Positions 2,576-50,189 of a DNA stretch of 64,000 nt are shown piece by piece. Origin of the DNA: Malacoraja senta (Eukaryota); NCBI GenBank assembly GCA_038087875.1, contig CM075998.1:5642001-5706000 (forward strand), given 5' to 3'. How positions within the stretch are numbered: position 1 is the stretch's first letter; the number at the start of each line of letters is the position of its first letter. A program made the position numbers and the translations under genes. The notes beneath the pieces are model-generated. The model was not told the DNA's origin. It saw only the letters and a list, made by a program, of their open reading frames with translations, and made no database searches.

Positions 2576-3585
2576 AGGGAATCTCCGGTCTGACTTTTTT
2601 AACGGCAACCTCTTATCTATGCGATCTAAATAGCGCTAAACGGCAGCCGTTAAAATTTTTTTTAAAATTTTTTTTTTTTTAAAAGGGCACCCGCTACTCA
2701 CAGACCCACGGTCTGTCTGAGCACTCTGCGGTACACCTCCACAATTTTCTTTATTAATACTTGTATTTTATTACTACAAGTCTTTTAAATCGCCTGAAAA
2801 CTGTAAGTAAAAACTTACCTTCAGGTTTTTTACTTACCGGTTTGGTGGAGCTCTGCTCGCTCCAAACATCGGCACTCTCGCTATGCGTCTGTACGATATG
2901 ACGCGTGTGCGGCTGGACGGGCTCTTCTTCACGTAGTCACTCACGTGACTCCGAAGTAAAATTGCCTCCTTCATGCAGGTATAAGATAGCTCTCAGCACC
3001 TAGTCTTTCCTCCAGTCTTTCCATCACCTTTGGAAACTTTTATTGCTGTTTATCAACATGAGGACCAAAGTTGTACCAATGAAAGTCAAAGAAGCCATTA
3101 TGAGACTGAGAAACAAGAATAAAACAGTTAGAGACATCAGCCAAACCTTAGGCTTACCAAAATCAACTGTTTGGAACATCATTAAGAAGAAAGAGAGCAT
3201 TGGTGAGCTTACTAATCGCAAAGGGACTGGCAGTCCAAGGAAGACCTCCACAGCTGATGACAGAAGAATTCTCTCTATAATAAAGAAAACCCCACAAACA
3301 CCTGTCCGACACATCAGAAACACTCTTCAGGAGTCAGGTGTGGATTTGTCAATGACCACTGTCCGCAGAAGACTTCATGAACAGAAATACAGAGGCTACA
3401 CTGCAAGATGCAAACCACTGCTTAGCTGCAAAAATAGGATGGGCGGGTTACAGTTTGCCAAGAAGTACTTAAAAGAGCAACTACAGTTCTGGAAAAAGGT
3501 CTTGTGGACAGATGAGATAAAGATGAACTTATATTAGAGTGATGGCAAGAGCAAAGTATGGAGGAGAGAAGGAACTGCCCAAGAT

Positions 3586-4424
3586 TGAATTGAATTGAAT
3601 TGAATTAGACTTTATTAATCCCCTTATTCAGGGGAAATTCAGAAGTCCTTGCAGCACACTAATAAAATACAACATAGTATTAAAAAGAAGTTCAACACCA
3701 AAACATCCCCCCACAGTGGTCCCCACTGTGGGGGAAGGCACAAAGTCCAGTCCCCATCCTCTTGTCCACCCAGAGTCGGGCCTATTGAGGCCTCCACAGT
3801 TGCCGCCACGGCGCCCGATGTTCTCGCCGGGTGATGGTACTCCGGCATCGGGAGAACCCCCAGCGGCTAGGGGTACCAGGAACGGCCGCATTCCCACCGG
3901 AGACCGCGGCTTCCAAGCCAACAGACCGCGCCGGACGGAGCCCCACACACTGGCGATCTCAGCAAGAGATCCCAGGCTCCGGGATGTACCGTTCAGCGTC
4001 GCAGCTGGCCGCTCCACAGAACCGCTGCTCCACGATGTTCTCATCGGCGGTCCCAGTATACTGGAGTTCCAGCGCGGCGACCCAGGAAAGGCATCGCCCG
4101 CTCCACGACAGCGCTCCAGCGCTGCACCGCCGCCAAAGCCGATGTTCTGCGCCGCCACCAAAGCCGATGTTCTGGCCAGGTCCCCTCAGGGAAACGTCGC
4201 TCCAGGACCCGCTGGTAGGCTGCAAGGACAGGTCGAAGGCGCTGCTCGGAGGAAGGCAACCCCTCCGACCAGGTAGGGACTCGAAAAGCAGTTTCCCCCT
4301 TCCCCCACCACCCCCCACACATAAAAAGATTAGGCCCCCTGACTACACACTCAACATACTAAAAATAATAAAAAAAGAAGGGAAAAAAACGGACAGCTGC
4401 AGGACAGGCAGCCGTTCTGGACAG
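3586..4424 (-). mobile_element. ORF-less GC-rich non-autonomous retroposon with Rex1/Babar-like 3' tail, inserted in Tc1
   Basis: Splits the Tc1 AQD|PKHTT codons. Minus-strand 3' end GAATTTCCCCTGAATAAGGGGATTAATAAAGTCT(AATTC)n. Shares motif blocks with 37181-38208. Confidence 0.75.
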
Positions 4425-4652
4425 AAAGCATACCACCTCATCTGTGAAACACGGTGGTGGGGTTGTTATCGCCTGGGCTTGTATGGGTGCTGAAGGTACT
4501 GGCTCACTTATCTTCATTGAAGACACAACTGCTGATGGTAGTAGCATAATGAATTCTGAAGTGTATAGACACATCCTATCTGCTCAAGTTCAAACAAATG
4601 CCTCAAAACTCATTGGCTGGGCGGTTCATTCTACAGCAAGACAATGATCCCA

Positions 4653-20444: not shown

Positions 20445-20858
20445 GAACCTACCTGATCTCCTGGTTGCCAAACACCTTAATTCTCCTTCCCATTCCCACA
20501 CTGACCTTTCTGTCCTGGGCCTCTTCCATTGTCAGAGTGAGGCCAAATGCAAATTGGAGGAACAGCACCTCATATGTCGCTTGGGCAGCTTACAGCCCAG
20601 TGGTATGAACATTGACTTCTCGAACTTCATGGAACCCCTGCATCCCCTCTCTATCCATCCCTCCCCCACCCAAGTCGTACCAGGTTCAAATTCATCTTTT
20701 TGAGTCTCATTGTCTGCAACTTGTTCTCACCTAGCACAGAGCTAACAATGGCCTGTTTCCTTTATCATTATAACTTTTTTGCACATCTTTCATTCATTTG
20801 TTCTATAATCTCACTACGTCACCGCTATATCTCTCGTTTCCCCTTCCCCTGACTCAGT
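20445..20858 (+). mobile_element. Penelope-like element, GIY-YIG C-terminus plus 3' UTR
   Basis: Reads PDLLVAKHLNSPSHSHTDLSVLGLFHCQSEAKCKLEEQHLICRLGSLQPSGMNIDFSNF. Confidence 0.9.
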
Positions 20859-21462: not shown

Positions 21463-21797
21463 TCATAGAGTCATAGAGTGATACAGTGTGGAAACAGGCC
21501 CTTCGACCCAACTTGCCCACATGTCCCAGCTACACTAGTCCCTCCTGCCCGCGTTTGGTCCATATCCCTCCAAATCTGTCCTATCCATGTACCTGTCTAA
21601 CTGTTTCTTAAACGTTGGGATAGTCCCAGCCTCAACTACCTCCTCTGGCAGCTTGTTCCATACACCCACCACCCTTTGTGTGAAAAAGTTACCTCTCAGG
21701 TTCCTATTAAATCTTTTCCCCTTCACCTTAAACCTCTGTCCTCTGGTCCTCGATTCCCCTACTCTGGGCAAGAGACATCTACCCGATCTATTCCTCT
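21463..21797 (-). mobile_element. CR1-type LINE 3' fragment
   Basis: ORF 21535-21822 contains FFTQRVVGVWNKLPEEVV; (ACTCTATG)n tail. Confidence 0.9.
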
Positions 21798-22132
21798 CAT
21801 GGTTTAATTTACCTCTCATCATGTGCAGGCAGCGGAGATTAGTTTATCTTGGCAGCATGTTCGGCATGGACACAGTGGGCCGAAAGGCCTGCTCCTGTGC
21901 TGTACTGTTCTATGTTCGAGTACAGATTGGCATTATTGAAGAAAACAAAGTCATTGAAACATTTATATTACAGAACAAGGACCAATTATCAGGCAAGTCC
22001 AGAGGCAGATGTGAACTTTCAGAGTTATTTATATAGTACTGAATTGTGATTTTCAACGAGCATATTCCCCCCAGCTAAGGGAAATACAATAACATTGCAT
22101 AGGTTCTCTGTCTATCTGGTGCTTATAGCTAA

Positions 22133-22462
22133 AAGCCCTGTCCCACGGTACGAGTTCATTCCAAGAGCTCTCCCGAGTTTGCCCTGATTCGAACTTGGAG
22201 ATTTACGGTAATGGCCACTCGTCGGTACTCGGGGCTCTCGTGGACATTTATCAACATGTTGAAATATCTTCACGAGTCTTCCCGTGCTTACCTGCCGTTA
22301 ACGAGTCTTCCCGAGTACCTGCCGTTCGCGTTACGAGCCGCTAAGTGACGTCCCCGAGCTCCGACGTACCCGCTACGTTCATTCTCCGTGCTCACCACGA
22401 GTTTGATTTTTTTAAAACTCGGGAGAGCTCTTGGAATGAACTCGTACCGTGGGACAGGGCTT
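22133..22462. mobile_element. PIF/Harbinger-type MITE (330 bp)
   Basis: 48-bp perfect TIR AAGCCCTGTCCCACGGTACGAGTTCATTCCAAGAGCTCTCCCGAGTTT; TAA TSD at 22130-22132 and 22463-22465. Confidence 0.95.
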
Positions 22463-23036
22463 TAACATGTGCAAGGCTTGTGTCCTCTGGAACCAGATTG
22501 CAAGACAAGAATTTAATTGTTGCATTTCAGGAAACGTGACAAGAAAACACTGTTTACTTGGTCACTGTGATCTCCCAGATTGCCAACATGCCAAGGTTGA
22601 TTGTCTTCCGCAGAGCTCCAATGAGCACAAACCTCAGACTGTGGGTCTGACCAAGCAAACTCCAGCGCTATGCCACGTATGCCAATTTGTTTGTGTTGGA
22701 CTTGGTGGCCAGTGGGAATCCTCACACCATTCACAAATCCATCTTTGAATACGGTTCGATGATGGGAATCCCAGCTGCAGCAAATGAACGGCAACAAAAA
22801 TATATCTACATGCCACTGAACCACAGGAGGTCAGGCAGAGAATTAAGGGTAGTTATAGGCATACCTTAAGAGGAGAGGAGAGTTTGCAAGAGAGACAGAA
22901 GTTTTGAGAGGGAGTTCCAGGGAGAGCTGCTGATGATGGAGTTAGGAAAATGTGGCATATGGAACAGGAATGTGGAAATCTTGGAGGGGAGTTGAGGTTT
23001 GAGGGAATTCTGGTGGCAATATTCTATATTGGCAAT

Positions 23037-23331
23037 AAGCGAGTTCTTCTCCGCGCTGGCTGTATGCCTGGGCCATCACTGCTCCGGGCCGGTGTCCCGT
23101 CAGTCCAGGGTCACCCCGGACATCTCCAGCCGCCCCCGGACAGGGATGGGACACTCGGGAGGTGACGGTCCAGTAGCAGTTCAACGGTGCTTGCAGCGCC
23201 GGAGACCCAGGGTCGATCCTGGCTACGGATGAAACGCAGGTCTGTATACATGCAGCAGCACAGCTACCGAGAATGTTTATCGCGAGTGACCGATGACCTT
23301 TGCGTGCGCAGTCGGAATACCGAACTCGCTT
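23037..23331. mobile_element. ISL2EU-like non-autonomous DNA transposon, short derivative
   Basis: Ends AAGCGAGTT...AACTCGCTT, AT on both sides; related to 51697-52731. Confidence 0.75.
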
Positions 23332-24640
23332 ATTGGAGCTTGTATTTTATATGTCAGGAAGACGCTGGCTACACAATATTAAAAAAAGGAGAAAAAAATC
23401 GACATCAATTGGTTTTACCTTCCATTTATATCCAGGGCTGTAAGAGTTGGCGTGACAGACTGAATGCATTTTTTGTTAATTAAAGACATCATGACCAATA
23501 TCCATGTTGAAATAAAGTTGGGATTATTGAATTTCCTCCTTCAACTACAAACACTGGCTTGTCTGACATGCACAAACGTCCCTCCCTGAACCACTCCCAA
23601 TACCGTTACATAACATTTGCTTTATAACACTGTAACTGCATGCAGGGAACATTTTACACCATTGAATATACAGTGGGAAAGCGTTCTACTTTGCACCTTG
23701 AAAACATATTTGATCTCTTGGTAATCCTAATAGATGTGGAAACAGGATAATTCTGGACCAAACTTGCATCCACAGAAGGGACCAAAATACATAGAGATGA
23801 TTCAGTAGCTTTAACTGCTTCATATACACGAAGGCTTGAATGTTAAAGTGGCACACCCAGCTCTAGGGAGATCACTTCTTTTGCTGCATTGTGTTCTGCG
23901 CTCCTCAGTCATGCTATTTGAAGTCCACATTCCACTCCCATTACCCATCATTGATATGTGCCAATATAAATCAAAATGAATGGACTGGGTGGACACAGGG
24001 TGTCGGCGAATGGCCTTCCGATTTCCAGTACACTGCTCACACTTCCCATTGAGGGAAAAATAACAGTTATAATGAGAGAAGTTTAATAGAATACTGAATT
24101 TGAAGTGCTTTTGATTGAGACACAAACACACAACATTCAAGACATGCAAGATGATAAAAATGTCTTATTTTGCTTCGCAGGTTGGTGTGGAGAAGATTTG
24201 CTTGACTTGGTTTTATGGATCAACAATTTAAAACCAAAATTCAAAGCACAGGAGAGTTACAGGACTCTATGTGAAATATGCTTCCCATCTGCACCTCACA
24301 ATGAATAGTGTTCTTTTACCATTTATTTTAAAAAGACATGGTCTTGGGATTAAGTTTGTTCAGCTGCTCGCTTTTAAGTTAAAACACAACATTAAAAAAA
24401 AGTGATTTATCTGCTCTTTATCAAAGGCATGGACTGTATTTTTACGCATAAGCATTTGCACACCAAAATTCCCATCTCCAATGTTTTGCTGTTTGTTTAA
24501 TTGAAGTTGATGATCCCGACACTTTCGCAGCTCTTGATGCCCAACCACATTAAAAAGGTGCTCTAAATGCAAGTTTGTGTTTTTTGGAGATACAAACTTC
24601 ACAGGGATATGAGTATTTAACTTAAATAGATGGGATAGAG

Positions 24641-25730
24641 TAGCGATGTTACAAAACCTACCTTCAGCGGCGCTGCAGTTCTGCCACTGGCCGTGTGCGC
24701 GACTTTGGCGCCTTTGAGGGGGGGGACGGGATTAAAATGCAGGTTTGTATTGCTTGTCGGAGAGGGATTTCCTCGGGCTGCTAGCTGATGAAGAAAAATG
24801 GATCGGACTTCCGTTCCCGTTTTTTTTCTTTTTAAAATTTTAATAAATCGCTGGACAATTTAATAATTGGATTAAAATAAAATGCGACTTCGAACGCCCT
24901 CAACACCTACAACGTGACGGATCGTAATAACAGGACAAAACAAAGGGTAAGTCGTCTATTTTAAATATAATCTTGCTTCTTGGGATGAATTTGGTTCCAA
25001 TCGATCGCGTTACAGAAACACCCACTCGCAAGATGATTTAAATGCTCATTTTCTTTGGACAATCATGTCATAAGAGCATCTAAATCGTCTATATTTTGTG
25101 TTATTGTCTATCCATAGTCAATATTTTTATACTAAATATACACAACAGTTTTAGCCACATGTGTTGAGCAAAAAATAATAATTTTGATTATATTGAGTGG
25201 ATGTTTCTAGATTAATTTATGGGAATTTATTTAACAATCCGTTACGGACTTACAGCATATAATACAATAATATTAAAGTTCTGATCTTGAGAATATCACA
25301 TTTTTGAATTTTCAAGGCAGTCTGGGTGTTTATTACTATTTCCGTCACAACGGTCAATTTTGTAATTAACTACAATTAGGTAATTAACTAATTATATGCT
25401 TTAATTTCAGGTCATCCAAGTAAGATGTTTTATATTTGTTTCAGAATGCTTCAATCTACAATAACTGAAAATTTCATTCAGTTCTCTTAATTTTTAAAAA
25501 AGTTATGGGCTTTTAACTGTCCTCGATCACAGCTTTTGTGTTAAGTTAATGGAAAAGCAATAGGGAACAAGATGCTAATTTCCGAGTATGAAAACGGCCA
25601 TAACTTTTTTAATACTGAAGATATGAAAGTGAATTAGGTGTCAAATTAAACTTATTTTTATGCTTTATCTGATGGGATAAATTGCAGACTTTTTTAAATT
25701 TTAAAATCTCAAAATGTTGTAACATTGCTA
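24641..25730. mobile_element. Non-autonomous TIR DNA transposon (hAT- or P-like) with 7-bp TSD
   Basis: TIR TAGC(G/A)ATGTTACAA; GATAGAG at 24634-24640 and 25731-25737. Confidence 0.85.
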
Positions 25731-26237
25731 GATAGAGGGAGGAGGTACAGGGCCATTACTTACATTTGCATGAACCATTTGCTGCCTTATAATGCTGCAA
25801 GTGCTGGCATCTCTCCAGTATTGTCAAGAGAAATAAGTGTGAAAAGACCATTGCCGAAACCTTCCAACTAAGGTCTATCTAGTCCTTGCCCAATGCCCAC
25901 CCATGCCGTGGTCTAGCAATGGGACGGCACAGTGGCACAACGGTAGAGTTGCTGCCTTACAGCTCCAGAGACCTGGGTTCAATCCTGACTACGGGTGTTG
26001 TCTGCACGGAATTTGTATGTTCTCCCTATGACCGCGTGGGTGCTCCGGTTTCCGCCCACACTCCAAAGACATACAGGTTTATAGGTTAATTGGCTTTGAT
26101 AAGTTTTTTTTTAACAGGGCTCGAAATTAGCAGTTGCCCGGGTGCCAATGGCAACTTACAGTCCCGCCGGGCAATCTAAAAGCCATGCCATTTTGCCCGG
26201 CTTGGCAAGCAACCGGGACACCCGCCCGCCATCCGTG

Positions 26238-26452
26238 TCCGGGTCTCGGCTCTCCCCTCGGCGCTCGCTCTCGGCGCTAGCTCTCGGCTCTCCGCTCGGC
26301 GCTAGGCTCTCGGGTCTCGCTCGGCTCTCGGGTCTCGGCGCTAACTCTCGGCTCTCCGCTCGGCGCTGGCTCTCGGTTCTCCGCTCGGCGCTGGCTCTTG
26401 GCTCTCCTCTCGGCTCTCGGGTCTCCGCTTGGCTCTCGGGTCTCCGCTCGTC
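26238..26452. repeat. GC-rich (CTCTCGG/CGCTCGG) minisatellite
   Basis: Directly visible; produces the spurious ORFs at 26142-26769. Confidence 0.9.
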
Positions 26453-27616
26453 ACGGCCGGCCGCCTTATACATGCGCACTGCCACGGCCAGCACATCATC
26501 GGCCGTGGTTGTGCGCATGTGCAGCCCTGCACATGCGCACTGCCACGGCAACGTCGGCCACTTTCTCCCTCCCTTTGCATTGGAGTTGTGGCCGACATTG
26601 CTGTCTGGTCGCTGCCTCACCACGACCGTTGAAAAACAACGCAGAATCACTCCCTGGAGCTGCAGTAACTCCCTGGAGTAACTCTTGCTTCTTGGTTTCC
26701 TGGTCCTCCAAAATATTTGAAATGGAATTTAAACTGGTGGACCCACCACCACCAAACTCTGAAAAATAACAGCCTTTTGCATTTTATCTATTTATTGTGT
26801 ATATATATGGTCCATAGTATATAGACACACTGAACTTTTATCTCCTGTTCTGTATTATGTTTACATATTCTGTTATGCTGCAGCAAGCAAGAATTTCATT
26901 GTCCTATCTGGGACACATGACAATAAAATTCTCTTGATTCTTGACTTGGACAAGCAAAAAAGGGTTCTTGGGGAAAAAAAAGCTACCTTAAATTTAGTTG
27001 CGTCAGGTTGGTACCTATGGTAGGGTGAAGACTATTCCATGTTTTAATTGTGCGGGGGAACTCCATGGAGCAGCCAGCATCTCTGGATAGAAAAAAATTG
27101 GGTGACGTTTCGGGTAGAGACCCTTCTTTACATTTCCTCTGGTTTTAGTGTTTTTAGTTTAATTTAAAGATACAGCGTGGAAACAGGCCCTTCGGCCCAC
27201 CGAGTCCACGCCAACCACCGATCACCCGTACACTAGTTCTATCCCACACATCAGCGACGTAAGTCAAGAGTGTTTTATTCTCTCACGTCACAGTTAGAAC
27301 AATGAAATCCTTACTTGCAGCAGCACAACAGAATATGTAAACATAGTACTCTGTAAACAATGTTATAAACGAGAAAACAAAACTCCATACAAACAGCACC
27401 CATATTCAGGATCAATTCCGGGTCTGGCAATTTTAGGCAGCAAATTTATGGCCAATGTACTGCCCCAATAGCCTTGAACTGAATTAAAACATACAGTAGC
27501 TGTAAAGGGGGACATAGCGTCACTTAGAGATTTAAGACTGAAAATGGATAGTTTCATTTTTTTTAGTAACCAAAGTTATCAACGTATAATTTTTTGTGTG
27601 TTGGAAAATAAAATAT

Positions 27617-27835
27617 AGTGGCACAGCTGGTGGACTTGCTGCCTCACACGCCAGAGATCTGTGTTCGATCCTGTTCTCGGGCACTGTCTGTGTTGAATTT
27701 GCACATTCTCCCTGCAAGCATGCGGGTTTCCTCCCAAAGACGCATTAGCTTTGTAGGTTAACTTGTCTCTGTAAAATTGCCCCTAATGTGCAAGGAGTGG
27801 GCGAGGAAAGTGGGATAACAGAACTTGTGTGAATG
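27617..27835 (+). mobile_element. Diverged HE1-type SINE inside the hAT-like element
   Basis: GTTCGATCCTG B box and V-domain. Confidence 0.75.
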
Positions 27836-28275
27836 GGTAGACAAAAATGCTGGAGAAACTCAGCAGGTGAGGCAGCATCTATGGAGCGAAGGAAATAGGC
27901 GACGTTTCGGGTCGAGACCCTTCTTCAGACTGATGTCGGGAGGGGTGGGGGGTGGGAAAAAGAAAGGAAGAGGTGGAGACAGTAGGCTGTGGGAGAGCTG
28001 GGAATGGGAGGGGAAGGAGGGAGAAAGCAAGGACTACCTGAAATTGGAGAAGCCAATGTTCATACCGCTGGGGTGTAAACTACCCAAGCAAAATATGAGG
28101 TGCTGTTCCACCAATTTGCGGTGGGCCTCACTCTGGCCATGGAGGCGGCCCAGGACAGAAAGGTCGGATTCGGAATGGGAGGGGGAGTTGAAGTGCTGAG
28201 CCACCGGGAGTTCAGGTTGGTTATTGCGAACTGAGTGGAGGTGTTGTGGAGGCCTGCGCTTGGTCTCACCGAGGT
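27836..28275 (-). mobile_element. Penelope-like element 3' end (GIY-YIG remnant plus terminal repeat)
   Basis: ORF 28034-28297 contains GETKRR...PVAQHFNSPSHS..DLSVLG...EQHLIF.LGSLHPSGMN. Confidence 0.92.
27898..27932 (-). ncRNA. Minimal hammerhead-ribozyme-like motif in PLE terminal repeat
   Basis: Minus strand CAGT-CTGAAGA-AGGGTCTCGACCC-GAAAC-GTC-GCC. Confidence 0.6.
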
Positions 28276-29419
28276 TGATCATACGCTGAATAACCATATT
28301 TTTGTTTGGAAGTGGAAAGAACTAATAGAAATTGCATTCATTGCAATGTGTAAAAAGAGATGAGATACTGTATTGTAATTTTGCTGCATGTTATTGTGGT
28401 ATATATATCATGTCTTGATTGGTGAATATGTTTAGTTTGTGACTTTATTTGAAGCAGAAATAATATGTGAATGCTTCATTGAGTATAATTCCGACTGGTA
28501 ACTACGCACTTCGTCCAAGCACATTATCGCACGCGTCATGCAAGCCGTCTTAAATGACCACCTAAACTGTCATTTGGCAACCTAAAAAGCTGCCAAGGTT
28601 GCCCGGCTGGCAACAGGGAAAAAAAATTAAGCGAGAGCCCTGAGTCCCTAGTGTGTAGGATAGTGCTAGTGATCGCTGGTCGGCACGGACTCAGTGCGCC
28701 GAAGAGCTTGTTTCCGCATTGCATCTCTAAACACGAAAGTCAATGCTCATTTGGTAAGAGATCTAGATGTATTTTGACAGACCAAAAATCTTAAGCCAAC
28801 TTGAACATCAACTCCAGTGCAAGCTCACCCTTAATGTTCCATAACAACAGCTGAATGGTTTAATGTTTACTTAAGGAATGATTCCAGAGTTCAAAGCAAG
28901 TTTCCTGGGCTACGAGAGTGTTCCTTCAGTGCTTAGTGGTGTAGGGATCTGCATTAGGACACAAATACATTATTAAATATTAACTCGTTGGAATATTATA
29001 TGTCATCTCTTTTTGCAAACTGGACCTCACTCAGATGATCTGGAAAGACGAGCAAAATTCAATGGCATATTATATGATTTTATAATCCCTTTCAATATTG
29101 CAACCACACCTCATCTGAAATTGAACCCAACAATGCGGCAACTCCAGGTGGATGACATCAGAGTGACAGATTTTCCCATGCCACTGCTGATATCCATCAA
29201 TGTGGTGACCAACAAACACTATTGATTCTGCAAATGAGGTCAGAGTAGAGCAAAACGGAGTCTCTCTCAACCCAAACTCACATCAAGCTCATTCATTCTG
29301 TAGCCATGGTGCTGTGCAAGGGAAATGTCAGCTTTGATTATTTTCTGTGAAGAAGGTTTGGATTCCTTGTTGGACAGAGACATTACCTAAAATCTGAAAA
29401 CCGAGTTAAGTCTTAAGTC

Positions 29420-29521
29420 TTCTTCTTCAGAAGGGTCTCGACCCGAAACATCTCCCATTCCTTCTCTCCAGAGATGCTGCCTGTCCCCTACTGAGTTACT
29501 CCAGCACTTTATGTCTATCTT
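29420..29521 (+). mobile_element. PLE terminal unit
   Basis: GAAGGGTCTCGACCCGAAACATC...GAGTTACTCCAGCAC. Confidence 0.8.
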
Positions 29522-29902
29522 TTATTAATAAAATTGTAGCATGCATTCAGCAGATTCTTTGTCCATAGGTCAGTCCAATTTCTAGGCTTGATTTCCAGCT
29601 AGGCAGAAAATAATCCAGAATAGTTCACAGGGGGAAAGATATCTGATCCTGGGAGCATGTCTATGGAGATAAAAGGAGTAGTGAAAGGGTAGATTGTAGT
29701 TCAGCACACCTGCATCTCCTAGCTCGTGAACAGTACAGTTTAAAAATCAGGCCACCTGCCCCATCTACATTAGTCCCACCTGCCCCTGCCTGAGCTATAT
29801 CCCCCTAAATCTTTCCTAGCCATGTATCTATCAAAATATCTTTTAAATGTTGTTATCGTACCCACCTCAACTACCTCCTCTGGCAACTCGTTCCGTACAC
29901 GG

Positions 29903-31019
29903 TATTGGGGGTTCAGTATTGATGTGGATAGAGAACTGGCTGGCAGACAGGAAGCAAATAGTAGGAGTAAACGGGTCCTTTTCAGAATGGCAGGCAGTGA
30001 CTAGTGGGGTACCGCAAGGCTCAATGCTGGGACCCCAGCTATTTACAATATATATTAATGATTTGGACGAGGGAATTGAATGCAACATCTCCAAGGATGA
30101 CACGAAGCTGGGAGGCAGTGTTAGCTGTGAGGAGGATGCTAGGAGGCTGCAAGGTGACTTGGATAGGTTGGGTGAGTGGACAAATGCATGGCAGATGCAG
30201 TATAATGTGGATAAATGTGAGGTTATCCACTTTGGTGGCAAAAACTGGAAAGTAGACTATTATCTGAATGGTGGCCGATTAGGAAAAGGGGAGATGCAAC
30301 GAGACCTGGGTGTCATGGTACACCAGTCATTGAAAGTAGGCATGCAGGTGCAGCAGGCAGTGAAGAAAGCGAATGGTATGTTAGCATTCATAGCAAAAGG
30401 ATGAGTATAAGAGTAGGGAGGTTCTACTGCAGTTGTACAGGGTCTTGGTGAGACCACACCTGGAGTATTGCGTACAGTTTTGGTCTCCTAATCTGAGGAA
30501 AGACATTCTTGCCATAGAGGGAGTACAGAGAAGGTTCACCAGACTGATTCCTGGGATGGCAGGACTTTCATATGAAGAAAGACTGGATAGACTTGGCTTG
30601 TACTCGCTAGAATTTAGAAGATTGAGGGGGGATCTTATAGAAACTTACAAAATTCTTAAGGGGTTGGACAGACTAGATGCAGGAAGATTGTTCCCGATGT
30701 TGGGGAAGTCCAGAACAGGGGGTCACAGTTTAAGGATAAGGGGGAAGTCTTTTAGGGCCGAGATGAGAAAAACATTTTTCACATAGAGAGTGGTGAATCT
30801 CTGGAATTCTCTGCCACAGAAGGTAGTTGAGGCCAGTTCATTGGCTATATTTAAGATGGAGTTAGATGTGGCCCTTGTGGCTAAAGGGATCAGGGGGTAT
30901 GGAGAGAAGGCAGGCACGGGATACTGAGTTGGATGATCAGCCATGATCATATTGAATGGCGTTGCAGGCTCGAAGGGCCGAATGGCCTACTCCTGCACCT
31001 ATTTTCTATGTTTCTATGT
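29903..31019 (+). mobile_element. Young CR1/HER1 LINE, 5'-truncated, nested in an older antisense CR1 (29755-29895 and 31020-31100)
   Basis: RT motifs SGVPQGSMLGPQLF, LQGDLDRL, LVRPHLEYC; CR1 3' UTR and (TTCTATG)-type tail. Confidence 0.95.
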
Positions 31020-31484
31020 ATATCCACCACCCTCGAGTTCCTATTAAATCTTTTCCTCTCACCTTAAACTTCTGGTTCTTGATTCCCCTAATCTGGGTAC
31101 ATTACTCCTTTACTTCAAAAATGTCCTCAGTCCCTGAGGTTGCTGAGTTTCCCAGAGACCTAGGAAACCTGGTAAAATTGGCCTGAATAAAAGACTTCAA
31201 TTGCCAAGCCACCTTCTTGGACTGATTTGACTGGGTTTCCCTTGCCCCACTGCTGTTAAATTCACAGATATGCATGTTGGGGTCAAGATTCAGATTTTTT
31301 ACAAAAACAACTGACATATTTTTAGCCGTTCAGGTTTATGTGCTTATACTAGAGCGAATCAAACAGACACCCATTAATGTGTACAAAGGTTGCAGAATAC
31401 TTAATGGAATTAGAAGCCACAAACTATTAAAAGTGCAGTGAAGAAGCGGAAACTGCTTATGCTGGCATTAACCAGGGCGCCAAA

Positions 31485-31782
31485 GTGACGCCATTGGTGG
31501 AGTCGCTGCCTCACAGCGCCAGAGACACGGGTTCAATTTTGACCTCGGGTATTGTCTATGTTAAGTTTGCACATTCTCCCTATGACCGCGTGGGTTTCCT
31601 CTAGGTGCTCTGGTTTCATCCCACATCCCAAATACATGCAGGTTAATCGGCCGCTGTACATTGCCCCTGGTGTGTCGGGAGTGGATGATAAAAGTGGGAG
31701 AACATAGAACTAGTATGAACGAGTGATCTATGGTCGGCGTGGACTCGGTGGGCCTGTTTCCATGCTGTAACTCTAAATTAAA
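31485..31782 (+). mobile_element. HE1-type V-SINE
   Basis: Head, V-domain and tail. Confidence 0.85.
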
Positions 31783-33039
31783 GTCGTCGAAACAAACGTT
31801 TTTTTCCTTTGGATCCATCACCTTCAAGGAAATATCAGCTTTCAGATTTGGTTGATCTTGTTTAAACACTGAAAATCTTGGAAATATATACATGGGTAAA
31901 GGTTAAGCTGTTTATACAGTCTTGCGAATTCCCAAGAGCACAACACAGAGCAGCAGTTAACAGTTCCCACATTTTGCTCCCCCGATCAAGCTTTCCAGCT
32001 ACCAGGCGATGGGAAGAGTGGATATTGCTGGAAATGGAATACATACAGAGGTCAATGGATAGCTGGCAGTGAAAAGCCTGACAATAATTAAATTAAGGGC
32101 TCAAATGGCATTATAAATCAGAAAGGGTAAAGCCCAAAGCTGACAATAAGGACGTCAATGTTATCTTACGTTGGGGGGGAATCTAAAATGTGCACATTTT
32201 CAGGATTTATAACAGTTGATGTGTCCTGAAATATCATGGTTATTAGTAAATGACAATTATTATTCTAAAATAAATCAGACTGCAATGTCTGACATGAAAT
32301 AAAATCAATACAAACAACACACGCCTCTGCTACACTGTGCTCCTCGGAATATCTTGTGAAATGGGAACATTTTCCGTTCAATTAAAAACACAAAGGCAGT
32401 CCCCCAACCCACCATAAAAACACGGATAAGATTTGAATGTAGATAGGACATGGAAAACACAGGGAAATTATTAAGTCATTCACTAATACACTCCCTATGC
32501 TCCAATCATTATCCCCTTTGAATTGGTCACAATGGTCACTGGACAACAACACATTCTCGTGGTTAGTTGTAGATCTTTTGTATTATATATATTTAAGCAG
32601 TTCCTGATTGAATATTGATTCCTGATTGTGAGCATTCATTCCAATTAAGAGTAATACACTTGGTGTAAACTACAAAGCTTAAATACTGAACCAACATGGA
32701 AACAAGAGCACTGGTGCTTTCTCACCAACCCAACAAAGGATGTTCTTGACCTTCGCAGCCAATTTGCCTGAATGTACAGATGGGCACAGTTGATTCAGTG
32801 ACCTTTATGTTGCAGCATCCTTTAATATGTGAGAGCTGATGATGAACATTTCTCAACTATTTCATGGAGGGGCCAGCAGAAACTAATGATGGCCCCGCAT
32901 GATTTCAACATTTGTACATGTTCTGGCAGCACAGAGAACCAGGTCCTTCATTTTTAGGTGGATCCACAACTTCACAGTCCAGGATATCAAGACCCACTAC
33001 ATAAGTTAACCAAACTCAGCCACACTGGTGATTGTAACA

Positions 33040-33163
33040 TAGTTGTATAGTAGTTTACTTAGTATATTTGTTTGTCTTGTATTATGGTGGTGGGTTCTGT
33101 TTTGTTTTATTGTATTGTAAATATTCTTTTTAATAATTTATTTTTTTCAATATTTTAAAAAAG
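33040..33163 (+). mobile_element. Tx1-like 3' UTR fragment
   Basis: TTGTATTATGGTGGTGGGTTCTG is shared with ~15998-16021. Confidence 0.6.
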
Positions 33164-33184
33164 CAGGTTACCATGCCCAAGCCA

Positions 33185-33550
33185 GTATGTCAAAGAGGAT
33201 TATTTTGAACTTCTACAGGTGTACAATAGAGGGCATATTGACTGGTTGCATCATGGCCTGGCTCGGCAACTTGACCTCCCCACCATCGAAGGGATTTATC
33301 GGCTTCTCTGCCTCAAAAAGGCAGCCAGCATCATCAGAGACCCACACCACCCTGGCCACGCTCTCATTTCACCCCTGTCATTGGGAAGAATGGAGCCTGA
33401 GAACTGTAACGTCCAGGTTCAGGAACAGCTTCTTCCCTACAGCCATCAGGCTATTAAACACTACAACCTCCAAATCAGCTCTGAATTTCAATAGACTATT
33501 ATTATTATTATTATACTGGTATTGTATGTTATTTGAGTATGTATGTGTAT

Positions 33551-33622
<72 letters not shown>

Positions 33623-33782
33623 GTGAGTGTGTATATATGCACACACTGAACTTTTTTTTCTCTCTCTCATTTACCATATTGTTTACTGTGTACTGTGTTT
33701 CCATATTGTGTTGTGCTGCAGCAAGTGAGATTGTCATTGTTCTATCTGGGACACATGACAATAAAACACTCTAGACTCTCTT
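33185..33782 (+). mobile_element. Internally deleted Rex1/Babar-type element containing (TG)n
   Basis: NFYRCTIEGILTGCIMAW, SRFRNSFFPTAIRLLN; GACACATGACAATAAA tail; (TG)n at ~33555-33618. Confidence 0.85.
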
Positions 33783-36711: not shown

Positions 36712-36888
36712 GGGGTCCCCACCTGAAACTTCACCTATCCATGTTCTCCACAGATGCTGCCTGACCCGCTGAGTTACTCCAGCACTCTGTGAAACGTCAC
36801 CTATCCATGTTCTCCACAGATGCTGCCTGACCCGCTGAGTTACTCCAGCACTTGGTGACCTTTTGGGTAAACCAGCATCTGCAGTTCA
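36712..36888 (+). mobile_element. PLE tandem terminal units
   Basis: Two ~66-bp units, reverse complement of the 6406-6682 array. Confidence 0.85.
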
Positions 36889-37180
36889 TTATTTTAAAAT
36901 TAGAGCTTACTTAATTTCACAAGAATGACAGGTTTGTGAGACACAGAGGGATCACGTGACCGTACTGGTCAGGCACTCAACTAAAGTTAACCTTGGATTG
37001 CTGCTGATAGTAGGTGCTTTAGATGTAGAATCAATGGACCTCCATCACGAGTAAGAGCAGGAGAAGAGCAGCAACCTTGCCAGAGAATGAAAGAGATGAT
37101 GCAGATAGGCCCTGGGTATGAGCCAAAAGTACAGAGTGCTGGAGTAACTCAGCGGGTCAGGCAGCATCTGTGGAGAACAT

Positions 37181-38208
37181 GCTCGCCTGCAGTCCGTCTT
37201 TTTTTTCTTTTGTTTTCTTTTGTGTTTTAGTTAAAGTTAGTTAAATTTAGTTTATTAGGTTGTGTATGTGTGGGGGGGGTGGGAGAAACATGGTTTTAGT
37301 CTCTTCCTTCGTGTCCCCCGTCTCCGTCTCCGTCTGCGCTGAGGCCTAATGGCGGAGCTGGCGGCCTCGGGGCTGTGGCAGCATTCCGGCGATGGCCCGA
37401 CTCAGGGCTGTGGCAGCGTTCCAGCGATGGCCCGACTCGGAGCTGTGGCGGTGTTCCGGCAGCGGCCCGACTCGGAGCTGTGGTGGTGTTCCGGCGGTGG
37501 CCCGACTTGGAGCTGTGGCGGTGTTCCGGCGGCGGCCCGACTTGGAGCTGTGGCGGTGTTCTGGCGGTGGCCCGACTTGGAGCTGTGGCGGTGTTCTGGC
37601 GTTCCAGCATCAGCCCAACATAGCTGTGGCGGCATTCTGGCGTTCCGGCGGCGGCCCGACTTGGAGCTGTGGCGCCGTTCTGGCGGCGGCCCGACTTGGT
37701 GCTGTGGCAGCGTTCTGGCGTTCCGGCGGCGGACCCGAATTCGGAGGCTCGGCCGCGGGCCCAGTGGACGACATCGTCGGGAGCTCGCAGGTCACAGGTT
37801 GGTGACCTGTTTTTCCGGAGCTCCCGCAACAACAGCTGCGTACGCTGGACTGGAGGGCGGCAGCTTCGGCAGCTTCGACCACCCCGGGCCACGGAGTTTG
37901 AACCGGCCCGTTCGCGGAGCACGGTTGAGCCACGGGACTTACTTACCATCACCCGGTGGGGTCACAACATCGGAGGCCTGGATCGCCTCAGCGCAGAGGG
38001 AGAACAAGGAGGGAAGAGACAAAGACTTTAAGACTTTTGCCTTCTATCACAGTGAGGTGCCTGGTGAACTCACTGTGGTGGATGTTAAATTTGTGTTTAT
38101 TGTATGTTTTTGTTACTTTTTATTATATGTATGATTGCAAGGCAACGAAATTTCGTTCAGACCGAAAGGTCTGAATGACAATAAAGGATACTTTGACTTT
38201 GACTTTGA
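37181..38208 (+). mobile_element. ORF-less GC-rich non-autonomous retroposon with Rex1/Babar-like tail
   Basis: Head CCTGCAGTCCGTC then T-run; tail GAAATTTCGTTCAGACCGAAAGGTCTGAATGACAATAAAGGAT(ACTTTG)n; motif blocks shared with 3586-4424. Confidence 0.75.
37367..37735. repeat. 35-bp GC-rich minisatellite (about 9-10 units)
   Basis: TGGAGCTGTGGCGGTGTTCCGGCGGCGGCCCGACT. Confidence 0.92.
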
Positions 38209-38209
38209 T

Positions 38210-38672
38210 GTTATGGGAAAGAGTGCAGAGAAGGTTTATGAGGATGTTGCCAGGACTCGAGAGCCTATAGGTAGAGGTTGAGTAGGCTGGGTCTCTATTC
38301 CTTGGAGCGCAGGAGGATGAGGGGTGATCTTATAGAGGTGTACAAAATCATGAGAGGAATAGATCGGGTAGACGCACAGAGTCTCTTGCACAGAGTAGGG
38401 GAATCGAGGACCAGAGGACATAAGTTTAAGGTGAAGTGAAAAGATTTTCACACAAACGGTGGTAGGAATATGGAACAAGCTGTTGGAGGAGGTAGTTGAG
38501 GCAGGCACTATTGCAACGTTTAAGTTACATATAGACACGTACATGGATAGCACAGGTTTAGAAGGATATGGGCCAAACGGCAGGTGGGACTAGTGTAGCA
38601 GGGACATGTTGGGCGGAATGGGCAAGTTGGGCTGAAGGGCCTGTTTCCACGCTGTATCACTCTGTGACTATA
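38210..38672 (+). mobile_element. CR1-type LINE 3' fragment
   Basis: GATCTTATAGAGGTGTACAAAATCATG...GGGCCTGTTTCCACGCTG. Confidence 0.9.
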
Positions 38673-39192
38673 TGGCAAAGGGATGACCACGACCGACAAT
38701 TAATGAGAGACTCAAATCCACATGGTAGACATTCTCACGTTGTTGACCAGAGTGCCTCATTGACCCCTTGCACGTAATTCATGAAACCCAAGCAAATCAG
38801 GACTGATAGTGAGAATGGTGCAATGAGTGTGCATGATATGCCTGCCGAGGTTGAATACCTGTAAATGGGTAAGTATTGTTGGAATAATAATGAGCCCGGG
38901 TTCAGACTGGTTGTGTTTTAGACCTTTCACTAACATTGACCACATGTGGGGAATCAGAGACTCCTTGCAGCATTGGGACCAGTTCCTTGAGCTTCATTCC
39001 AAGGACTGATTCCTCCAGGCACCTCCTCTCAATGGTACTTTATTTCTTCTCTTTGCAGCTTCTGCAGACATCCAACTCTCCAACTGAGATTCAGAAATGA
39101 ATTGCTCAGTTAGGGTGCCCCTCCCCTATCTGTGCTGCTAATGTAGTTGGGGCTTTAAACTGGTATGACTACTTCTATGGAGTGCATACATT

Positions 39193-43737: not shown

Positions 43738-43805
43738 ACGTACTCCAAAGTGCTGGGGTAACTCAGCAAGTTAAGCAGCATCTCTGGAGAACATGGATAG
43801 GGTGA

Positions 43806-44585
43806 TACATAGATACATAGATACATAGAAAATAGGTGCAGGAGTAGGCCATTCGGCCCTTCGAGCCTGCGTCTTTGGAGTGTGGGCTGATCATCCAACT
43901 CAGTATCCCGTACCTGCCTTCTCTCCATACCCCCTGATCCCCTTAGCCACATCTAACTCCCTCTTAAATATAGCCAATGAACTGGCCTCAACTACCCTCT
44001 GTGGCAGAGAGTTACAGAGATTCACCACTCTCTGTGTGAAAAAGTTTTTCCTCATCACGGTCTTAAAGGATTTCCCCCTTATCCTTCAGCTGTGACCCCT
44101 TGTTCTGGACTTCCCCAACATCGGGTACAATCTTCCTGCATCTAGCCTGTCCAACCCCATAAGAATTTTGTACGTTTCTATAAGATCCCCTCTCAATCTC
44201 CTAAATTCTAGCGAGTATAAGCCAAGTCTATCCAGTCTTTCTTCATATGAAAGTCCTGACATCCCAGGAATCAGTCTGGTGAACCTTCTCTGCACTCCCT
44301 CTATGGCTATAATGTCCTTCCTCAGATTTGGAGACCAAAACTGTACGCAATACTCCAGGTGTGGTCTCACCAAGACCCTGTACAACTGCAGTAGAACCTC
44401 CCTGCTCCTATACTCAAATCCTTTTGCTATGAAAGCCAACATACCATTCGCTTTCTTCACTGCCTGCTGCACCTGCATGCCTACTTTCAATGACTGGTGT
44501 ACCATGACACCCAGGTCTCGCTGCATCTCCCCTTTTCCTAATCGGCCACCATTTAGATAATAGTCTGCCTTCCCGTTTTTGCCAA
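43806..44585 (-). mobile_element. Young CR1/HER1 LINE 3' part inserted in a PLE unit (43745-43805 and 44586-44720)
   Basis: ORF 44086-44769 RT C-terminus is nearly identical to 30240-30730; GTGAT flanks both sides. Confidence 0.95.
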
Positions 44586-46932: not shown

Positions 46933-48019
46933 TGGTGGTGCAGTATCTGTAATCAAACAGTTAAATCTTATTGTTCCCTTCCATTCGTCAACTACTTTGC
47001 CTTAAAGAATCCTTAACATTATAGAACATAGGAAAATGTTAGCTTTGCATTCAAATCCAATTATTTTCTGTCACAAACCTGTTCGCACTTTATTCAAAAT
47101 TACTAATGCCCTGTCATAGCCTATTGAGCAGAACATTTTTAAAGAAAATCAGATAAATGAGGCAAAACTTGGCTACTTAAGTTTCAAGCATAAATAGCTC
47201 TTTCGGGGTTTGAAGCCACTGAATTGCTCATGTATCAAGGCCAAAACCAATTTGGGATCATGAACAAACCTTAGTACGGCACCACAGACTATAAATTTAA
47301 GAGATTAAAACAAGCTACCACTCAAGAAAAATACCAATGCTAACTAAACTTTAGAAAGACAACTCACCCAGTTTTTAAATGCACGGCAGACATTTGTCAC
47401 TCTAGGTCTTAAAATATAAATATTGCTCTGGAGTGCAAACGTCAGACAACAGTCCAGGCCATGGAAAATAAAGACACAGTAAACTAGAGCAAAAAGACCT
47501 TGAGCAATACACCACCTTATTAGGCATGACCCTTATTATTCCAAGATGGGTGGAGATCAAAGTGAGATGTGATTTGAAGAAATTACTTTTGACAGTGAAT
47601 GCATTGCACTTGATGCCGTATAACCTAATGCAATATTCTTTCCAGACACGGGTCACCTAGAATCCTATAAATGAAACAGGTACATGGAACTGCAACAGCA
47701 AGAAAAATAACTGAACAAAAATACTCATTACCAATGACATAGACTACGACTGCAGATGGCTTTCTCTCAGTCATTCTCAAATATTTAACTAATCTTATGG
47801 TTCAAATGATAAAAACAACCTGCCCAAACTCTCCTCTCAAGTGCCATCTCCATCTCAAATTCAATCTCACTGTGTTCTTCCACTTCAACTGAAATATCTC
47901 CAATTAAAATTCCAGACAGTTGGAGAAAATATAGATTTTTAAAAAGAGTCAAGGCAGCATGCATGAAAGCAACCATCCTCTAGAAACATAACAGATTTTG
48001 GAGATCCACATTCCTGTGA

Positions 48020-49622
48020 GACTTACATGATACATGAGGTGTGTCATGCCATGAACAAGCTGTCCAACAACAAAGCAAGTGGCTTGGATCATATTTCTGC
48101 TGAATATCTTAACTATGCCAGTATGAGGGTAGCTCCTCTCCTTGCTATTTGTTTTACTGGCTTTATGATTCATGGCTTGTTACCAGACTCAATGTTGTCT
48201 GTTCTGTTAGTGCCAGTCATTAAGGACAAAGCTGGTAAAGTAGGCAGCCTAAATAATTACAGGTCCATAGCTTTAGCCAGCATATTGTCACAAGTCCTAG
48301 AAAGAATTCTGCTGGATAGATTAAATGAGTTTGTGAACTCCACAGATAACCAGTTTGGTTTTAAAGCTAAACATGGCACTGATGTGTATATATGCCCTAA
48401 AGGAGATTGTACACAAATATAGGGGTAAAAACTCATCAATTCTTATGTGCCTTATTGATGCTTCCAAAGCCTTTGATCATGTTAACCATAGAAAGCTGTT
48501 TGTTAAAATGAGTCAAAGAGGGGTGCCTAAATACATTGTGAGAATTCTGACATACAGGTATGCCCACCAGACTATGCAAATAAAATGGGGCAATAGGGTC
48601 TCAGCCCCATTTGGGGTTAGACATCATGTCAGACAAAGGGGGGGGGGGGATTTTGTCCCCAGTCCTTTTTAATCTTTATATTGATGATCTGTCCAAGCAA
48701 TTGAAAGCCTGTAATACTGGGTGCATGATTGGTAATACTTTACTGAACCATAATATGTATGCAGATGATCTTGTGGTCTTCAGTCCATCTAGCGCTGGTC
48801 TACAGCAGCTCCTTACTATGATGTTCTGTGTGTGGTGTGGAACATGATATCAAATATAATGCTGGTAAGAGTGCTGTTATAATCTGTGGAACCAAAGAGG
48901 ATAAATGTCTAATATTTCCTGATTTTAAATTGTCTGACAATAATCTTAAGTGTCTGTAATAAGGTAAAATATCTTGGACATTTTAATACAGAACTAATGA
49001 CAGATGATGAGGATATTTATAGGCAACGCCGTATTATGTATGCGCATGCAAACATTATCTTACGCAAATTTAGTGCGTGTACAGATGGAGTGAAGCTGTC
49101 TCTGTTCAGAGTATATTGTACACCACTCTATACTGCACACCAGTGGTCAAACTACAGAAAAACAAGTTTACAGAGACTTAAAGTAGCGTATAATGATGCC
49201 ATGAGAATACTACTAAAGAAACCTAGATGGTGTAGTGCAAGTAAAATGTTTGTGGCTGCAGGAGTCAGTACTATACAAGTTATCCTAAGAAATCTTATGT
49301 ATACATTTATTTGCTGGTTTAATGACTCTGAAAATGAAATTATCTTGGTCTTATCAAACATAAGGTTTAGCACTACACGCTACCAATCCCAGCTGTGGAG
49401 ACATTGGTATAGTTGTCTCCTTGTAGGACACTGATCTTTCTTTTTATTCTGGTTTTTAAACCATGTATTGTGGTTTTGTATATAATTTATGATGCTCTTA
49501 TAAGTAAATTACTAAGCTTTTATATGTATTTTATGGTGATTTTATATGCAATGTGTTTTATGTAATGTCGTCTTTTATCTGGACCTTGAGTCTGAAATAA
49601 AAGTGTAATAATAATAATAATA
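48020..49622 (+). mobile_element. 5'-truncated non-LTR retrotransposon, RTE-X-like RT with frameshifts
   Basis: KASGLDHIS, NNYRSIAL, DNQFGFK, IDASKAFDHVNH, ILSPVLFNLYIDDL, MYADDLV, YLG; 3' end GAGTCTGAAATAAAA then (TAA)n. Confidence 0.85.
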
Positions 49623-50189
49623 ATTATAATTATTATTATTATTACCAGTAATTATCCAAAAGGATTGGACAATCTTGAAAGCATTATAATACATTTGCCA
49701 TCACCTTGAGAATTAGCCATAAGAGGACATTGCCTGTACCAAGCTCTTCCAACTGTTACAACTCAGACCACGGCCGTTGTACCACCTTGGCAGAAATGCC
49801 CCATTCTTTAAGGGGTATTTTAATGGTGCCATTCAACAATGGCAAGGGTCTACGATGAATGGGATAGCACAGTCTAGGGTGAATGGGATAGGTGTGGTCA
49901 AGGCCGGCCTTAGGAGGTGCGGGGCCCAATTGGGAACAATTTTGGTGAGCACCAGGTTCCCAGCCAAGGTCTGTGGAATCATAGAAATACAAATAAAGTA
50001 TAGACTTTATATATCTATGGTAGAATGGAAAGTAATCAAAATGTGCGCTTAAACAGTGCCTGCGAGTTAATGGACCAAACAGATCTAAGCTACATTTTAA
50101 TATAAAATTGCATACATGTAAGCCTACAAGTAACAAACAACATGTGTAGATCACCTCTGAAAAGTACATAGTTACAATAGTTAGTTAGT

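What the first reader, a model, noticed from the sequence alone, without database searches (positions are those of the whole stretch)
37181..38208. ORF-less retroposon copy B: same scaffold, different tail hairpin, internal 35-bp VNTR
Seen: the CACAGTGAG/CTCACTGTG stem (38048-38077) is kept with a different loop from copy A. The terminal hairpin differs in sequence (TTCAGACC-GAAA-GGTCTGAA versus TCCCCT..AGGGGA) but sits at the same place between AATTTC and AATAAA. The tail repeat is (ACTTTG)n instead of (AATTC)n, and a GC-rich VNTR expands the middle. Inference: structure rather than sequence is selected and subfamilies may have switched LINE partner. The modular head-VNTR-tail design is loosely analogous to primate SVA.
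Basis: partly seen in the sequence, partly recalled or inferred. Interest (0 to 1): 0.7.

Follow-up and report, generated by a model that had tools for sequence, protein, structure and literature searches.

The report
Skate non-coding retroposon copy with minisatellite
This 1-kb insert is one fairly fresh copy of a very abundant gene-less jumping element of skates. It probably borrows the copying enzyme of a LINE, and this copy has grown a 35-base internal repeat array that most of its relatives lack, so it is a curiosity for transposon specialists rather than a new kind of element.

Summary
Window 37182-38207 (+) carries:
- a T-rich/G-run head;
- ten 35-bp GC-rich tandem units (37372-37735);
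- a GC-rich body with a two-tier hairpin;
- the CACAGTG hairpin;
- a terminal 11-bp/GAAA hairpin between AATTTC and AATAAAG;
- an (ACTTTG)3 end.

Copy A (3584-4425, minus strand) has the same order of parts with other hairpin sequences and an (AATTC)4 end.

Contigs from four organisms show a high-copy family. The unique flank has depth 2.3 in run X1, against 54,000-168,000 over most of the 3' half. The 5' part is several-fold rarer. The array is 10-1000 times rarer.

So this is a non-autonomous, non-coding, LINE-dependent retroposon. T-runs rule out Pol III transcription. The body is CpG-rich (observed/expected 0.95). The array is a sublineage expansion, not a family module.

The claim that structure is kept is supported, but only by two copies. 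The SVA analogy is loose.

This scan has met the family many times on other DNA of this genome (for example s1-213380, s1-140178, s1-178004). This report adds rough abundance, the 5'/3' gradient, the rarity of the array and the CpG state.

The parts
37182..37330 (+). Head. It holds a CTGCAG..TCCGT leader, T-runs of 4-9, an AT-rich stretch and a G8 run (37272-37279). It aligns with the head of copy A.
   Evidence: (z 5.3)
37331..37371 (+). GC-rich segment just before the array. It resembles the end of a unit and is far more abundant in contigs than the array itself.
37372..37735 (+). Minisatellite of ten GC-rich units: eight of 35 bp, two lengthened to 41 and 43 bp by a GCGTTCC(A/G) insert. GC is 70% and CpG observed/expected is 0.94.
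   Evidence: rare in contigs
37736..38040 (+). GC-rich body. It includes the motif TACCATCACCCGG..AACATCGG (37944-37973), shared with copy A.
37778..37826 (+). Hairpin H1, two tiers. The outer stem is 9 bp (37778-37786 / 37818-37826) and the inner stem 8-9 bp (37788-37795 / 37802-37809). The loop is 6 nt and a 7-nt internal loop lies on the 3' side.
   Evidence: z -5.5
38043..38082 (+). Hairpin H2, with the CACAGTG core at 38048-38077.
38153..38178 (+). Terminal hairpin H3: 11 bp with a GAAA loop. It is the presumed recognition site for the LINE enzyme.
   Evidence: (z -5.2)
38180..38185 (+). AATAAA, kept at the same place in copy A.
38190..38207 (+). (ACTTTG)3 terminal microsatellite.
3584..4425 (-). 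Copy A, a distant relative inserted in a Tc1 transposase remnant. Its parts are H1 at 3936-3981, H2 at 3708-3734, H3 at 3619-3635, AATAAA at 3611-3616 and (AATTC)4 at 3584-3606. CTT lies on both sides.

Best explanation
Copy B is a nearly full-length member of a very abundant family of 0.8-1.0-kb non-coding, non-autonomous non-LTR retroposons of skates.

Shown:
- It is dispersed and high-copy in at least four organisms.
- Its 3' part is commoner than its 5' part.
- It has no conserved ORF and no tRNA, 5S or 7SL head.
- It ends in a stem-loop, AATAAA and a short tandem repeat.

Inferred mechanism:
- RNA polymerase II makes the RNA, either from the element or by read-through. T-runs in the first 60 nt would stop Pol III.
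- AAUAAA places the RNA 3' end at about the microsatellite.
- The reverse transcriptase of a stringent-type LINE of the CR1 group (Rex1- or L2-like) binds the terminal hairpin and primes on the microsatellite at a nicked target (target-primed reverse transcription). This gives frequent 5' truncation and tiny or absent target duplications.
- The internal hairpins H1 and H2 probably serve RNA stability or RNP assembly.

The 35-bp array arose by replication slippage or unequal exchange in one sublineage and is not needed for mobility.
For: Abundance:
- The unique flank 36900-37115 has depth 2.28 in X1 and 87.9 in X2.
- The element's 3' half has 30,637-168,270 (X1), 239,651-1,304,450 (X2), 196,816-2,976,232 (X9) and 2,302-19,247 (X15).
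- The head bins have 16,338-33,674 (X1), 26,368-260,404 (X2), 39,628-1,098,399 (X9) and 228-3,780 (X15).
- In X1 and X15 every head bin lies below nearly every 3' bin. In X2 and X9 the ranges overlap at the pre-array bin, so the 5'/3' gradient is clear in only two of the four runs.

No coding capacity:
- Several frames on both strands are open across the GC-rich part.
- There are no homologues and no Pfam match.
- The sense ORFs of A and B are unrelated.

No small-RNA head: no tRNA and no Rfam match.

Tail anatomy. Hairpin plus repeat is what the ORF2 proteins of L2-clade LINEs bind, and the loop gives specificity (PMC4176376). [quoted passage not shown]

Insertion site: copy A interrupts a Tc1 transposase reading frame, between ...VWRREGTAQ and KHTTSSVKHGGG..., with only CTT repeated at the two sides.

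Freshness: CpG observed/expected is 0.97 in B against 0.46 for the window. Only about a dozen positions in the 3' 470 nt differ from the majority of contigs.
Against: - No LINE carrying either tail was seen, so dependence on a LINE and its clade rest on anatomy alone.
- Summed contig depth is not a copy number. The AT-rich head may be under-counted at the 80% likeness threshold.
- In runs X2 and X9 the pre-array bin is about as deep as the 3' body, so the 5'/3' gradient is not uniform.
- Target duplications are ambiguous. CTT at A and ATG at B are 3 nt only, and about 8 nt of Tc1 seem to be missing at A.
- No RNA evidence: no listed run is on record as RNA.
- Structure conservation rests on two window copies.
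Confidence: 0.8

Rival explanations
1. A and B use the same LINE lineage, with no partner switch. Their different hairpins and end repeats reflect step-by-step co-divergence of tails within one Rex1-like lineage, not capture of a foreign tail.
For: - The frame around the hairpin is shared: TGCAAGG, AATTTC, hairpin, AATAAAG, then the repeat.
Against: - Stem and loop differ completely: 11 bp with GAAA against 6 bp with GAAUA.
- In zebrafish L2 elements the loop decides which enzyme binds (PMC4176376).
- Earlier unchecked notes of this scan report bodies with several tail types (s1-140178).
Confidence: 0.35
2. The element is an internally deleted LINE, like the SIDEs of R2. Its head and tail would be the 5' and 3' untranslated regions of its own parent LINE.
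For: - Deletion derivatives that keep only the ends are known (PMC3414825).
- The greater abundance of the 3' half could come partly from sharing that half with truncated parent LINEs.
Against: - No remnant of ORF1 or ORF2.
- No LINE in the window shares any part of it.
- Not testable further here.
Confidence: 0.2
3. The element lies on the opposite strand and is a poly(A)-type (L1-style) retroposon. The reverse complement of the head has AATAAA followed by an A-rich run.
For: In both copies the reverse complement of the head reads AATAAA and then A-rich sequence.
Against: - The A-rich run is not terminal. It is followed by 17-45 nt that match in part between A and B.
- Depth rises toward the other end.
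- The hairpin, AATAAAG and microsatellite lie exactly at the other end in both copies.
- There are no long target duplications.
Confidence: 0.03

Closest known systems
SVA (SINE-VNTR-Alu) of hominids (PMC3287187)
   Same: Non-coding composite retroposon of 1-2 kb with no Pol III gene head. It has a GC- and CpG-rich internal minisatellite with units of about 35 bp and is moved in trans by a LINE.
   Different: SVA ends in poly(A) and uses the relaxed-type L1. Its VNTR is a constant module flanked by Alu-like and SINE-R parts. Here the end is a hairpin plus microsatellite, the array occurs in a minority of copies, and no part derives from a known SINE or retrovirus.
Stringent-type SINE/LINE tail sharing (UnaL2, ZfL2-1/2; HE1 SINE with HER1 LINE in elasmobranchs) (PMC4176376, PMC3747384)
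   Same: A terminal stem-loop followed by a short tandem repeat serves as the handle for the LINE enzyme. 5' truncation is frequent and target duplication is tiny or absent.
   Different: Those SINEs are 150-400 nt long and have tRNA-derived Pol III heads. This element is about 1 kb, has no tRNA head and carries Pol III stop signals. Its partner was not identified.
Rex1/Babar LINE 3' ends (PMC6274825)
   Same: [quoted passage not shown] That matches A against B.
   Different: No Rex1 sequence could be compared here. The likeness is one of description only.
CORE-SINE / V-SINE type superfamilies with a conserved centre and exchangeable tails (PMC5499810, PMC11481361)
   Same: Distant members keep internal segments while their 3' ends differ.
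   Different: Those have tRNA heads and a sequence-conserved centre. Here the kept internal parts are mainly hairpins with different sequences.
SIDEs, internally deleted R2 elements (PMC3414825)
   Same: Gene-less non-LTR elements that keep the ends needed for copying.
   Different: SIDEs are demonstrably derived from their parent. No parent is known here.

Membership tests
Non-autonomous LINE-dependent retroposon (broad sense) | Dispersed and multi-copy | tested here: met
   summed contig depth is 10^3-10^4.8 times the single-copy flank, in four organisms. This is not an exact copy number.
Non-autonomous LINE-dependent retroposon (broad sense) | No coding capacity of its own | tested here: met
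Non-autonomous LINE-dependent retroposon (broad sense) | 3' end identical or near-identical to that of an autonomous LINE | not testable with these tools
Collection scans gave only chance bacterial hits.
Non-autonomous LINE-dependent retroposon (broad sense) | 5' truncation series with a fixed 3' end | tested here: inconclusive
   the 3' half is clearly deeper than the head in X1 and X15. In X2 and X9 the ranges overlap at the pre-array bin. Contigs cannot show individual truncation points.
Non-autonomous LINE-dependent retroposon (broad sense) | Short or absent target-site duplication (CR1-group style) | tested here: inconclusive
   CTT flanks A and ATG flanks B, 3 nt each. About 8 nt of Tc1 may be missing at A.
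Classical SINE | Head derived from tRNA, 5S or 7SL with a Pol III promoter | tested here: not met
   No tRNA and no Rfam match. T-runs of 4-9 lie within the first 60 nt.
SVA-type composite | VNTR as a constant central module | tested here: not met
   The array is 10-1000 times rarer than its flanks. Its unit has no significant match in copy A.
SVA-type composite | Poly(A) end and L1-type long target duplications | tested here: not met
   The end is a microsatellite with no A-run. Only 3-nt repeats flank the copies.
Rex1- or L2-tailed element | Terminal stem-loop followed by a short tandem repeat | tested here: met
   This shows anatomy only, not sequence identity to any LINE.

The most novel reading that the evidence does not exclude
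Skates carry a Pol II-transcribed, CpG-island-like, structured non-coding retroposon superfamily. It keeps three RNA hairpins by compensating change and exchanges its terminal handle among different Rex1/L2 LINE lineages. In one sublineage it has independently evolved an SVA-like expandable GC-rich minisatellite. That would be a convergent SVA in a cartilaginous fish.
Probability: 0.3. Interest if true: 0.55.

Novelty: new variant of a known kind. Interest (0 to 1): 0.35.

Why it matters
If the family really exchanges tails among LINE lineages, it is a natural experiment in how stringent LINE enzymes recognise their RNA handle. It would also be a second, independent case of a long non-coding, VNTR-bearing LINE parasite beside primate SVA. 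Many thousands of CpG-rich 1-kb inserts could also seed CpG islands or regulatory elements in skate genomes. For genome annotation, the practical point is that these elements should be masked as retroposons. They should not be read as CpG islands or as genes, although chance ORFs reach 261 aa.

Tried and rejected
- Protein route to other copies: the 261-aa and 97-aa sense translations found nothing. The third search, with a CR1 RT fragment, found skate proteins, including Leucoraja erinacea at 96% identity.
- Pattern scans of metagenome, viral and prokaryote genome collections gave either nothing or chance hits. The metagenome hits lie in a conserved bacterial protein-coding gene, probably a sugar-nucleotide dehydratase; the prokaryote-genome hits showed no wider similarity to the element.
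- Rfam and tRNA scans were empty.
- I looked for a partner LINE in the window. It holds only CR1 fragments with 8-mer tails, (TTTCTATG)n and (CTCTATGA)n, and one other decayed LINE.
- I tested whether the whole GC-rich body is a decayed array of the 35-bp unit. The unit profile has no significant match outside 37372-37720, so I rejected the idea.
- I first took copy A to sit in-frame in Tc1 with a clean 3-bp duplication. On translation the Tc1 frame is offset and about 8 nt seem to be missing, so I withdrew the claim.
- I considered the opposite-strand poly(A) reading and rejected it (see rivals).
- The big representative protein search was not run. The non-coding call rests on the lack of any ORF shared by A and B, not only on the absence of relatives.

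Full report
**What is there.** The stretch was read directly. In order it shows:
- a leader, CTCGCCTGCAGTCCGTC;
- T-runs of up to nine;
- an AT-rich stretch and a G8 run;
- a GC-rich tandem array;
- a GC-rich body;
- an AT-rich 3' region with two hairpins;
- AATAAA and (ACTTTG)3.

Tandem Repeats Finder reports a 35-bp period with 6.7 copies at 90% match, plus two overlapping rows. Cutting at the recurring GCTGTGG gives ten units from 37372 to 37735. Eight are 35 bp long. Two are lengthened to 41 and 43 bp by a short GCGTTCC(A/G) insert. Neighbouring units resemble each other most, as expected for stepwise duplication.

The CACAGTGAG..CTCACTGTG pattern occurs once in the window and in none of 100 shuffles. 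The terminal hairpin folds as 11 bp with a GAAA loop (z -5.2).

**Copy A and homology.** The (AATTC)n end led to copy A on the minus strand. MAFFT shows colinear motifs. The similarity is weak: nhmmer gives E = 0.025 for the heads and nothing for the tails. A local alignment test against dinucleotide shuffles is significant for the head (z 5.3, 0 of 300) and the tail (z 4.2-4.9, 1 of 300). It is not significant for the middle (z 0.5).

Three composite patterns occur in the 64 kb only at A and B:
- AATTTC-N-AATAAAG;
- TGCCTTC-N-CACAGTG;
- TACCATCACCCGG-N-AACATCGG.

A and B are therefore distant members of one superfamily with a shared frame, not close copies.

**Hairpins.**
- In B the outer stem is 9 bp, the inner stem 8-9 bp, the loop 6 nt, and a 7-nt internal loop lies on the 3' side.
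- In A the outer stem is 7-8 bp, the inner stem 8 bp with one bulge, the loop 5 nt, and an 8-nt internal loop lies on the 3' side.

The outer stems share GGAGC, while the inner stems are unrelated in sequence. The CACAGTG hairpin keeps its core but extends outward in A (C4/G4) and inward in B (AG/CT). The terminal hairpins are unrelated in sequence.

This fits selection for structure. It rests on two copies, and A's H1 alone is not better than shuffles (z -1.3).

**It is a high-copy element.** Contigs of four public runs from four organisms were laid on 36900-38500 at 80% likeness. The unique flank 36900-37115 gives the single-copy level. Summed contig depth per run:

| Region | X1 | X2 | X9 | X15 |
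|---|---|---|---|---|
| Unique flank 36900-37115 | 2.28 (one contig, no differences) | 87.9 (one contig, 12 differences in 261) | 0-11.7 | 0 |
| Head 37224-37385 | 16,338-33,674 | 26,368-260,404 | 39,628-1,098,399 | 228-3,780 |
| Array 37386-37709 | 85-4,133 | 1,446-24,696 | 1,671-10,633 | 24-489 |
| 3' half 37710-38195 | 30,637-168,270 | 239,651-1,304,450 | 196,816-2,976,232 | 2,302-19,247 |

The tool warns that summed depth is not a copy number, so I read it only as an order of magnitude of 10^3 to 10^4 or more. Three points follow.
- The family is real and is shared by several species.
- The 3' part is commoner than the 5' part in X1 and X15, as 5' truncation during target-primed reverse transcription would give. 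In X2 and X9 the pre-array bin is as deep as the body, so the gradient is uneven.
- The array is one to three orders of magnitude rarer than the segments on either side, yet tens of distinct contigs per run cover it.

Most copies therefore lack this expansion, but it is not private to this locus. A profile of the unit has no significant match elsewhere in B or in A. The body is not a decayed array of that unit.

Joints in the contigs also show variants that skip 37770-37965, which includes H1, in organisms B and G.

**Non-coding.** Several frames on both strands are open across the GC-rich part, up to 261 aa. That is what GC-rich non-coding DNA gives. The translations have no homologues and no Pfam family. 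The sense ORFs of A and B are unrelated. There is no tRNA and no Rfam match.

From established knowledge, runs of four or more T end Pol III transcripts. Both copies have several such runs in their first 60 nt. A full-length RNA must therefore come from Pol II or from read-through.

**Insertion sites.**
- *Copy A* interrupts a Tc1 transposase remnant. On the + strand the frame ends ...VWRREGTAQ at 3582 and resumes KHTTSSVKHGGG at 4426. This pins the insert to 3584-4425, plus or minus 3. CTT lies on both sides. The two frames are offset, and by my memory of Tc1 proteins two or three residues are missing, so a small target deletion or an older frameshift is possible.
- *Copy B*, upstream, is preceded by the first 51 nt or so of the very abundant hammerhead/Penelope-type unit. 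That unit normally continues GATAGGTGACGTTTCGGG (loose ends), but here B replaces the continuation.
- *Copy B*, downstream, is followed at once by a CR1 ORF2 C-terminal segment. ATG lies on both sides.

Long target duplications are absent in both copies. That fits CR1-group LINEs and not L1.

**Age.** CpG observed/expected is 0.97 in B (0.94 in the array, 0.95 in the body) and 0.78 in A, against 0.46 for the window. About a dozen positions in the last 470 nt differ from the letter that most contigs carry. B is therefore fairly fresh, or is protected from methylation decay.

**Partner LINE.** The window holds two CR1 subfamilies with classical 8-mer ends, (TTTCTATG)n and (CTCTATGA)n. It also holds one decayed LINE of another clade at 47967-49431. 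Neither has these tails.

The CR1 RT fragment is 96% identical to a Leucoraja erinacea protein, so the window is little skate or a close relative. The public collections open to pattern scans hold no skate DNA.

The partner is therefore inferred from anatomy only.
- L2-clade enzymes bind a terminal stem-loop, and the loop gives specificity (PMC4176376).
- Skates carry CR1, L2, Rex1, Zenon, Crack and Daphne elements, and CR1-group elements make up 22-34% of the genome in elasmobranchs (PMC13343379).

**Partner switch or co-divergence.** The different loops (GAAA against GAAUA) suggest that A and B use different enzymes. The shared frame around the hairpin leaves co-divergence within one lineage about as likely as capture of a foreign tail.

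**Relation to earlier work of this scan.** The family has been met many times on other pieces of this genome. Follow-ups called it a 0.7-0.9-kb non-coding retroposon with a shared body, covarying hairpins and L2- or Rex1-type tails (s1-213380, s1-140178, s1-178004, s1-178020). First readers elsewhere also noted VNTR-bearing, SVA-like copies (s1-207034, s1-141358). I treated these as leads. My own data agree on the kind of element. They add rough abundance across species, the rarity of the array, the CpG state and the Pol III argument. They do not confirm any clade for the tails.

**Verdict.** The element is a new variant of a known kind, of moderate to low interest, and has already been seen repeatedly in this scan.

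Noticed in passing
window 37123-37181: The first 51 nt or so of the hammerhead/Penelope-type mini-unit abut B's 5' end in the same orientation. In most contigs that unit continues GATAGGTGACGTTTCGGG, but here B replaces the continuation. B either inserted with a target deletion or this is a template-switch chimera.
   Followed up: partly
window 38209-38700: The 3' part of a CR1 (ORF2 C-terminus...RRRMRGDLIEVYKIMRGIDRV...) begins directly after B's microsatellite. This is among the most abundant sequences in all four runs.
   Followed up: partly
window 37770-37965: Contigs of organisms B and G join 37769/37771 to 37965/37966. These family variants lack about 195 nt, including hairpin H1, so H1 may not be essential.
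   Followed up: no
window 47967-49431: A decayed LINE of another clade, with an RT carrying YIDD and YADD and a C-terminal ...KYLGH...DDEDIYRQRR...VKLSLFRVYCTPLY. A run that translates as Ile repeats follows near 49600-49650 and may be its tail.
   Followed up: no
window 55590-55660, 43800-43870 and 21460-21510: Two CR1 subfamilies end in a GC-rich hairpin plus 8-mer repeats: (TTTCTATG)n or (TATCTATG)n, and (CTCTATGA)n.
   Followed up: partly
window 6449-6648 and 36724-36852: The hammerhead-type unit also forms 66-bp tandem arrays of 3.0 and 2.0 copies at 96-98% match.
   Followed up: no
P0003, P0066: Partial proteins filed under Aeromonas cavernicola and Proteus mirabilis, on contigs of 709 and 653 bp, are 79% and 59% identical to this skate CR1 reverse transcriptase. 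They are probably fish DNA contaminating bacterial assemblies.
   Followed up: no
window 3584-4425 flanks: The Tc1 remnant hit by copy A has a second, separate insertion of a 94-bp hammerhead unit at 4642-4757 (note s1-181384).
   Followed up: no
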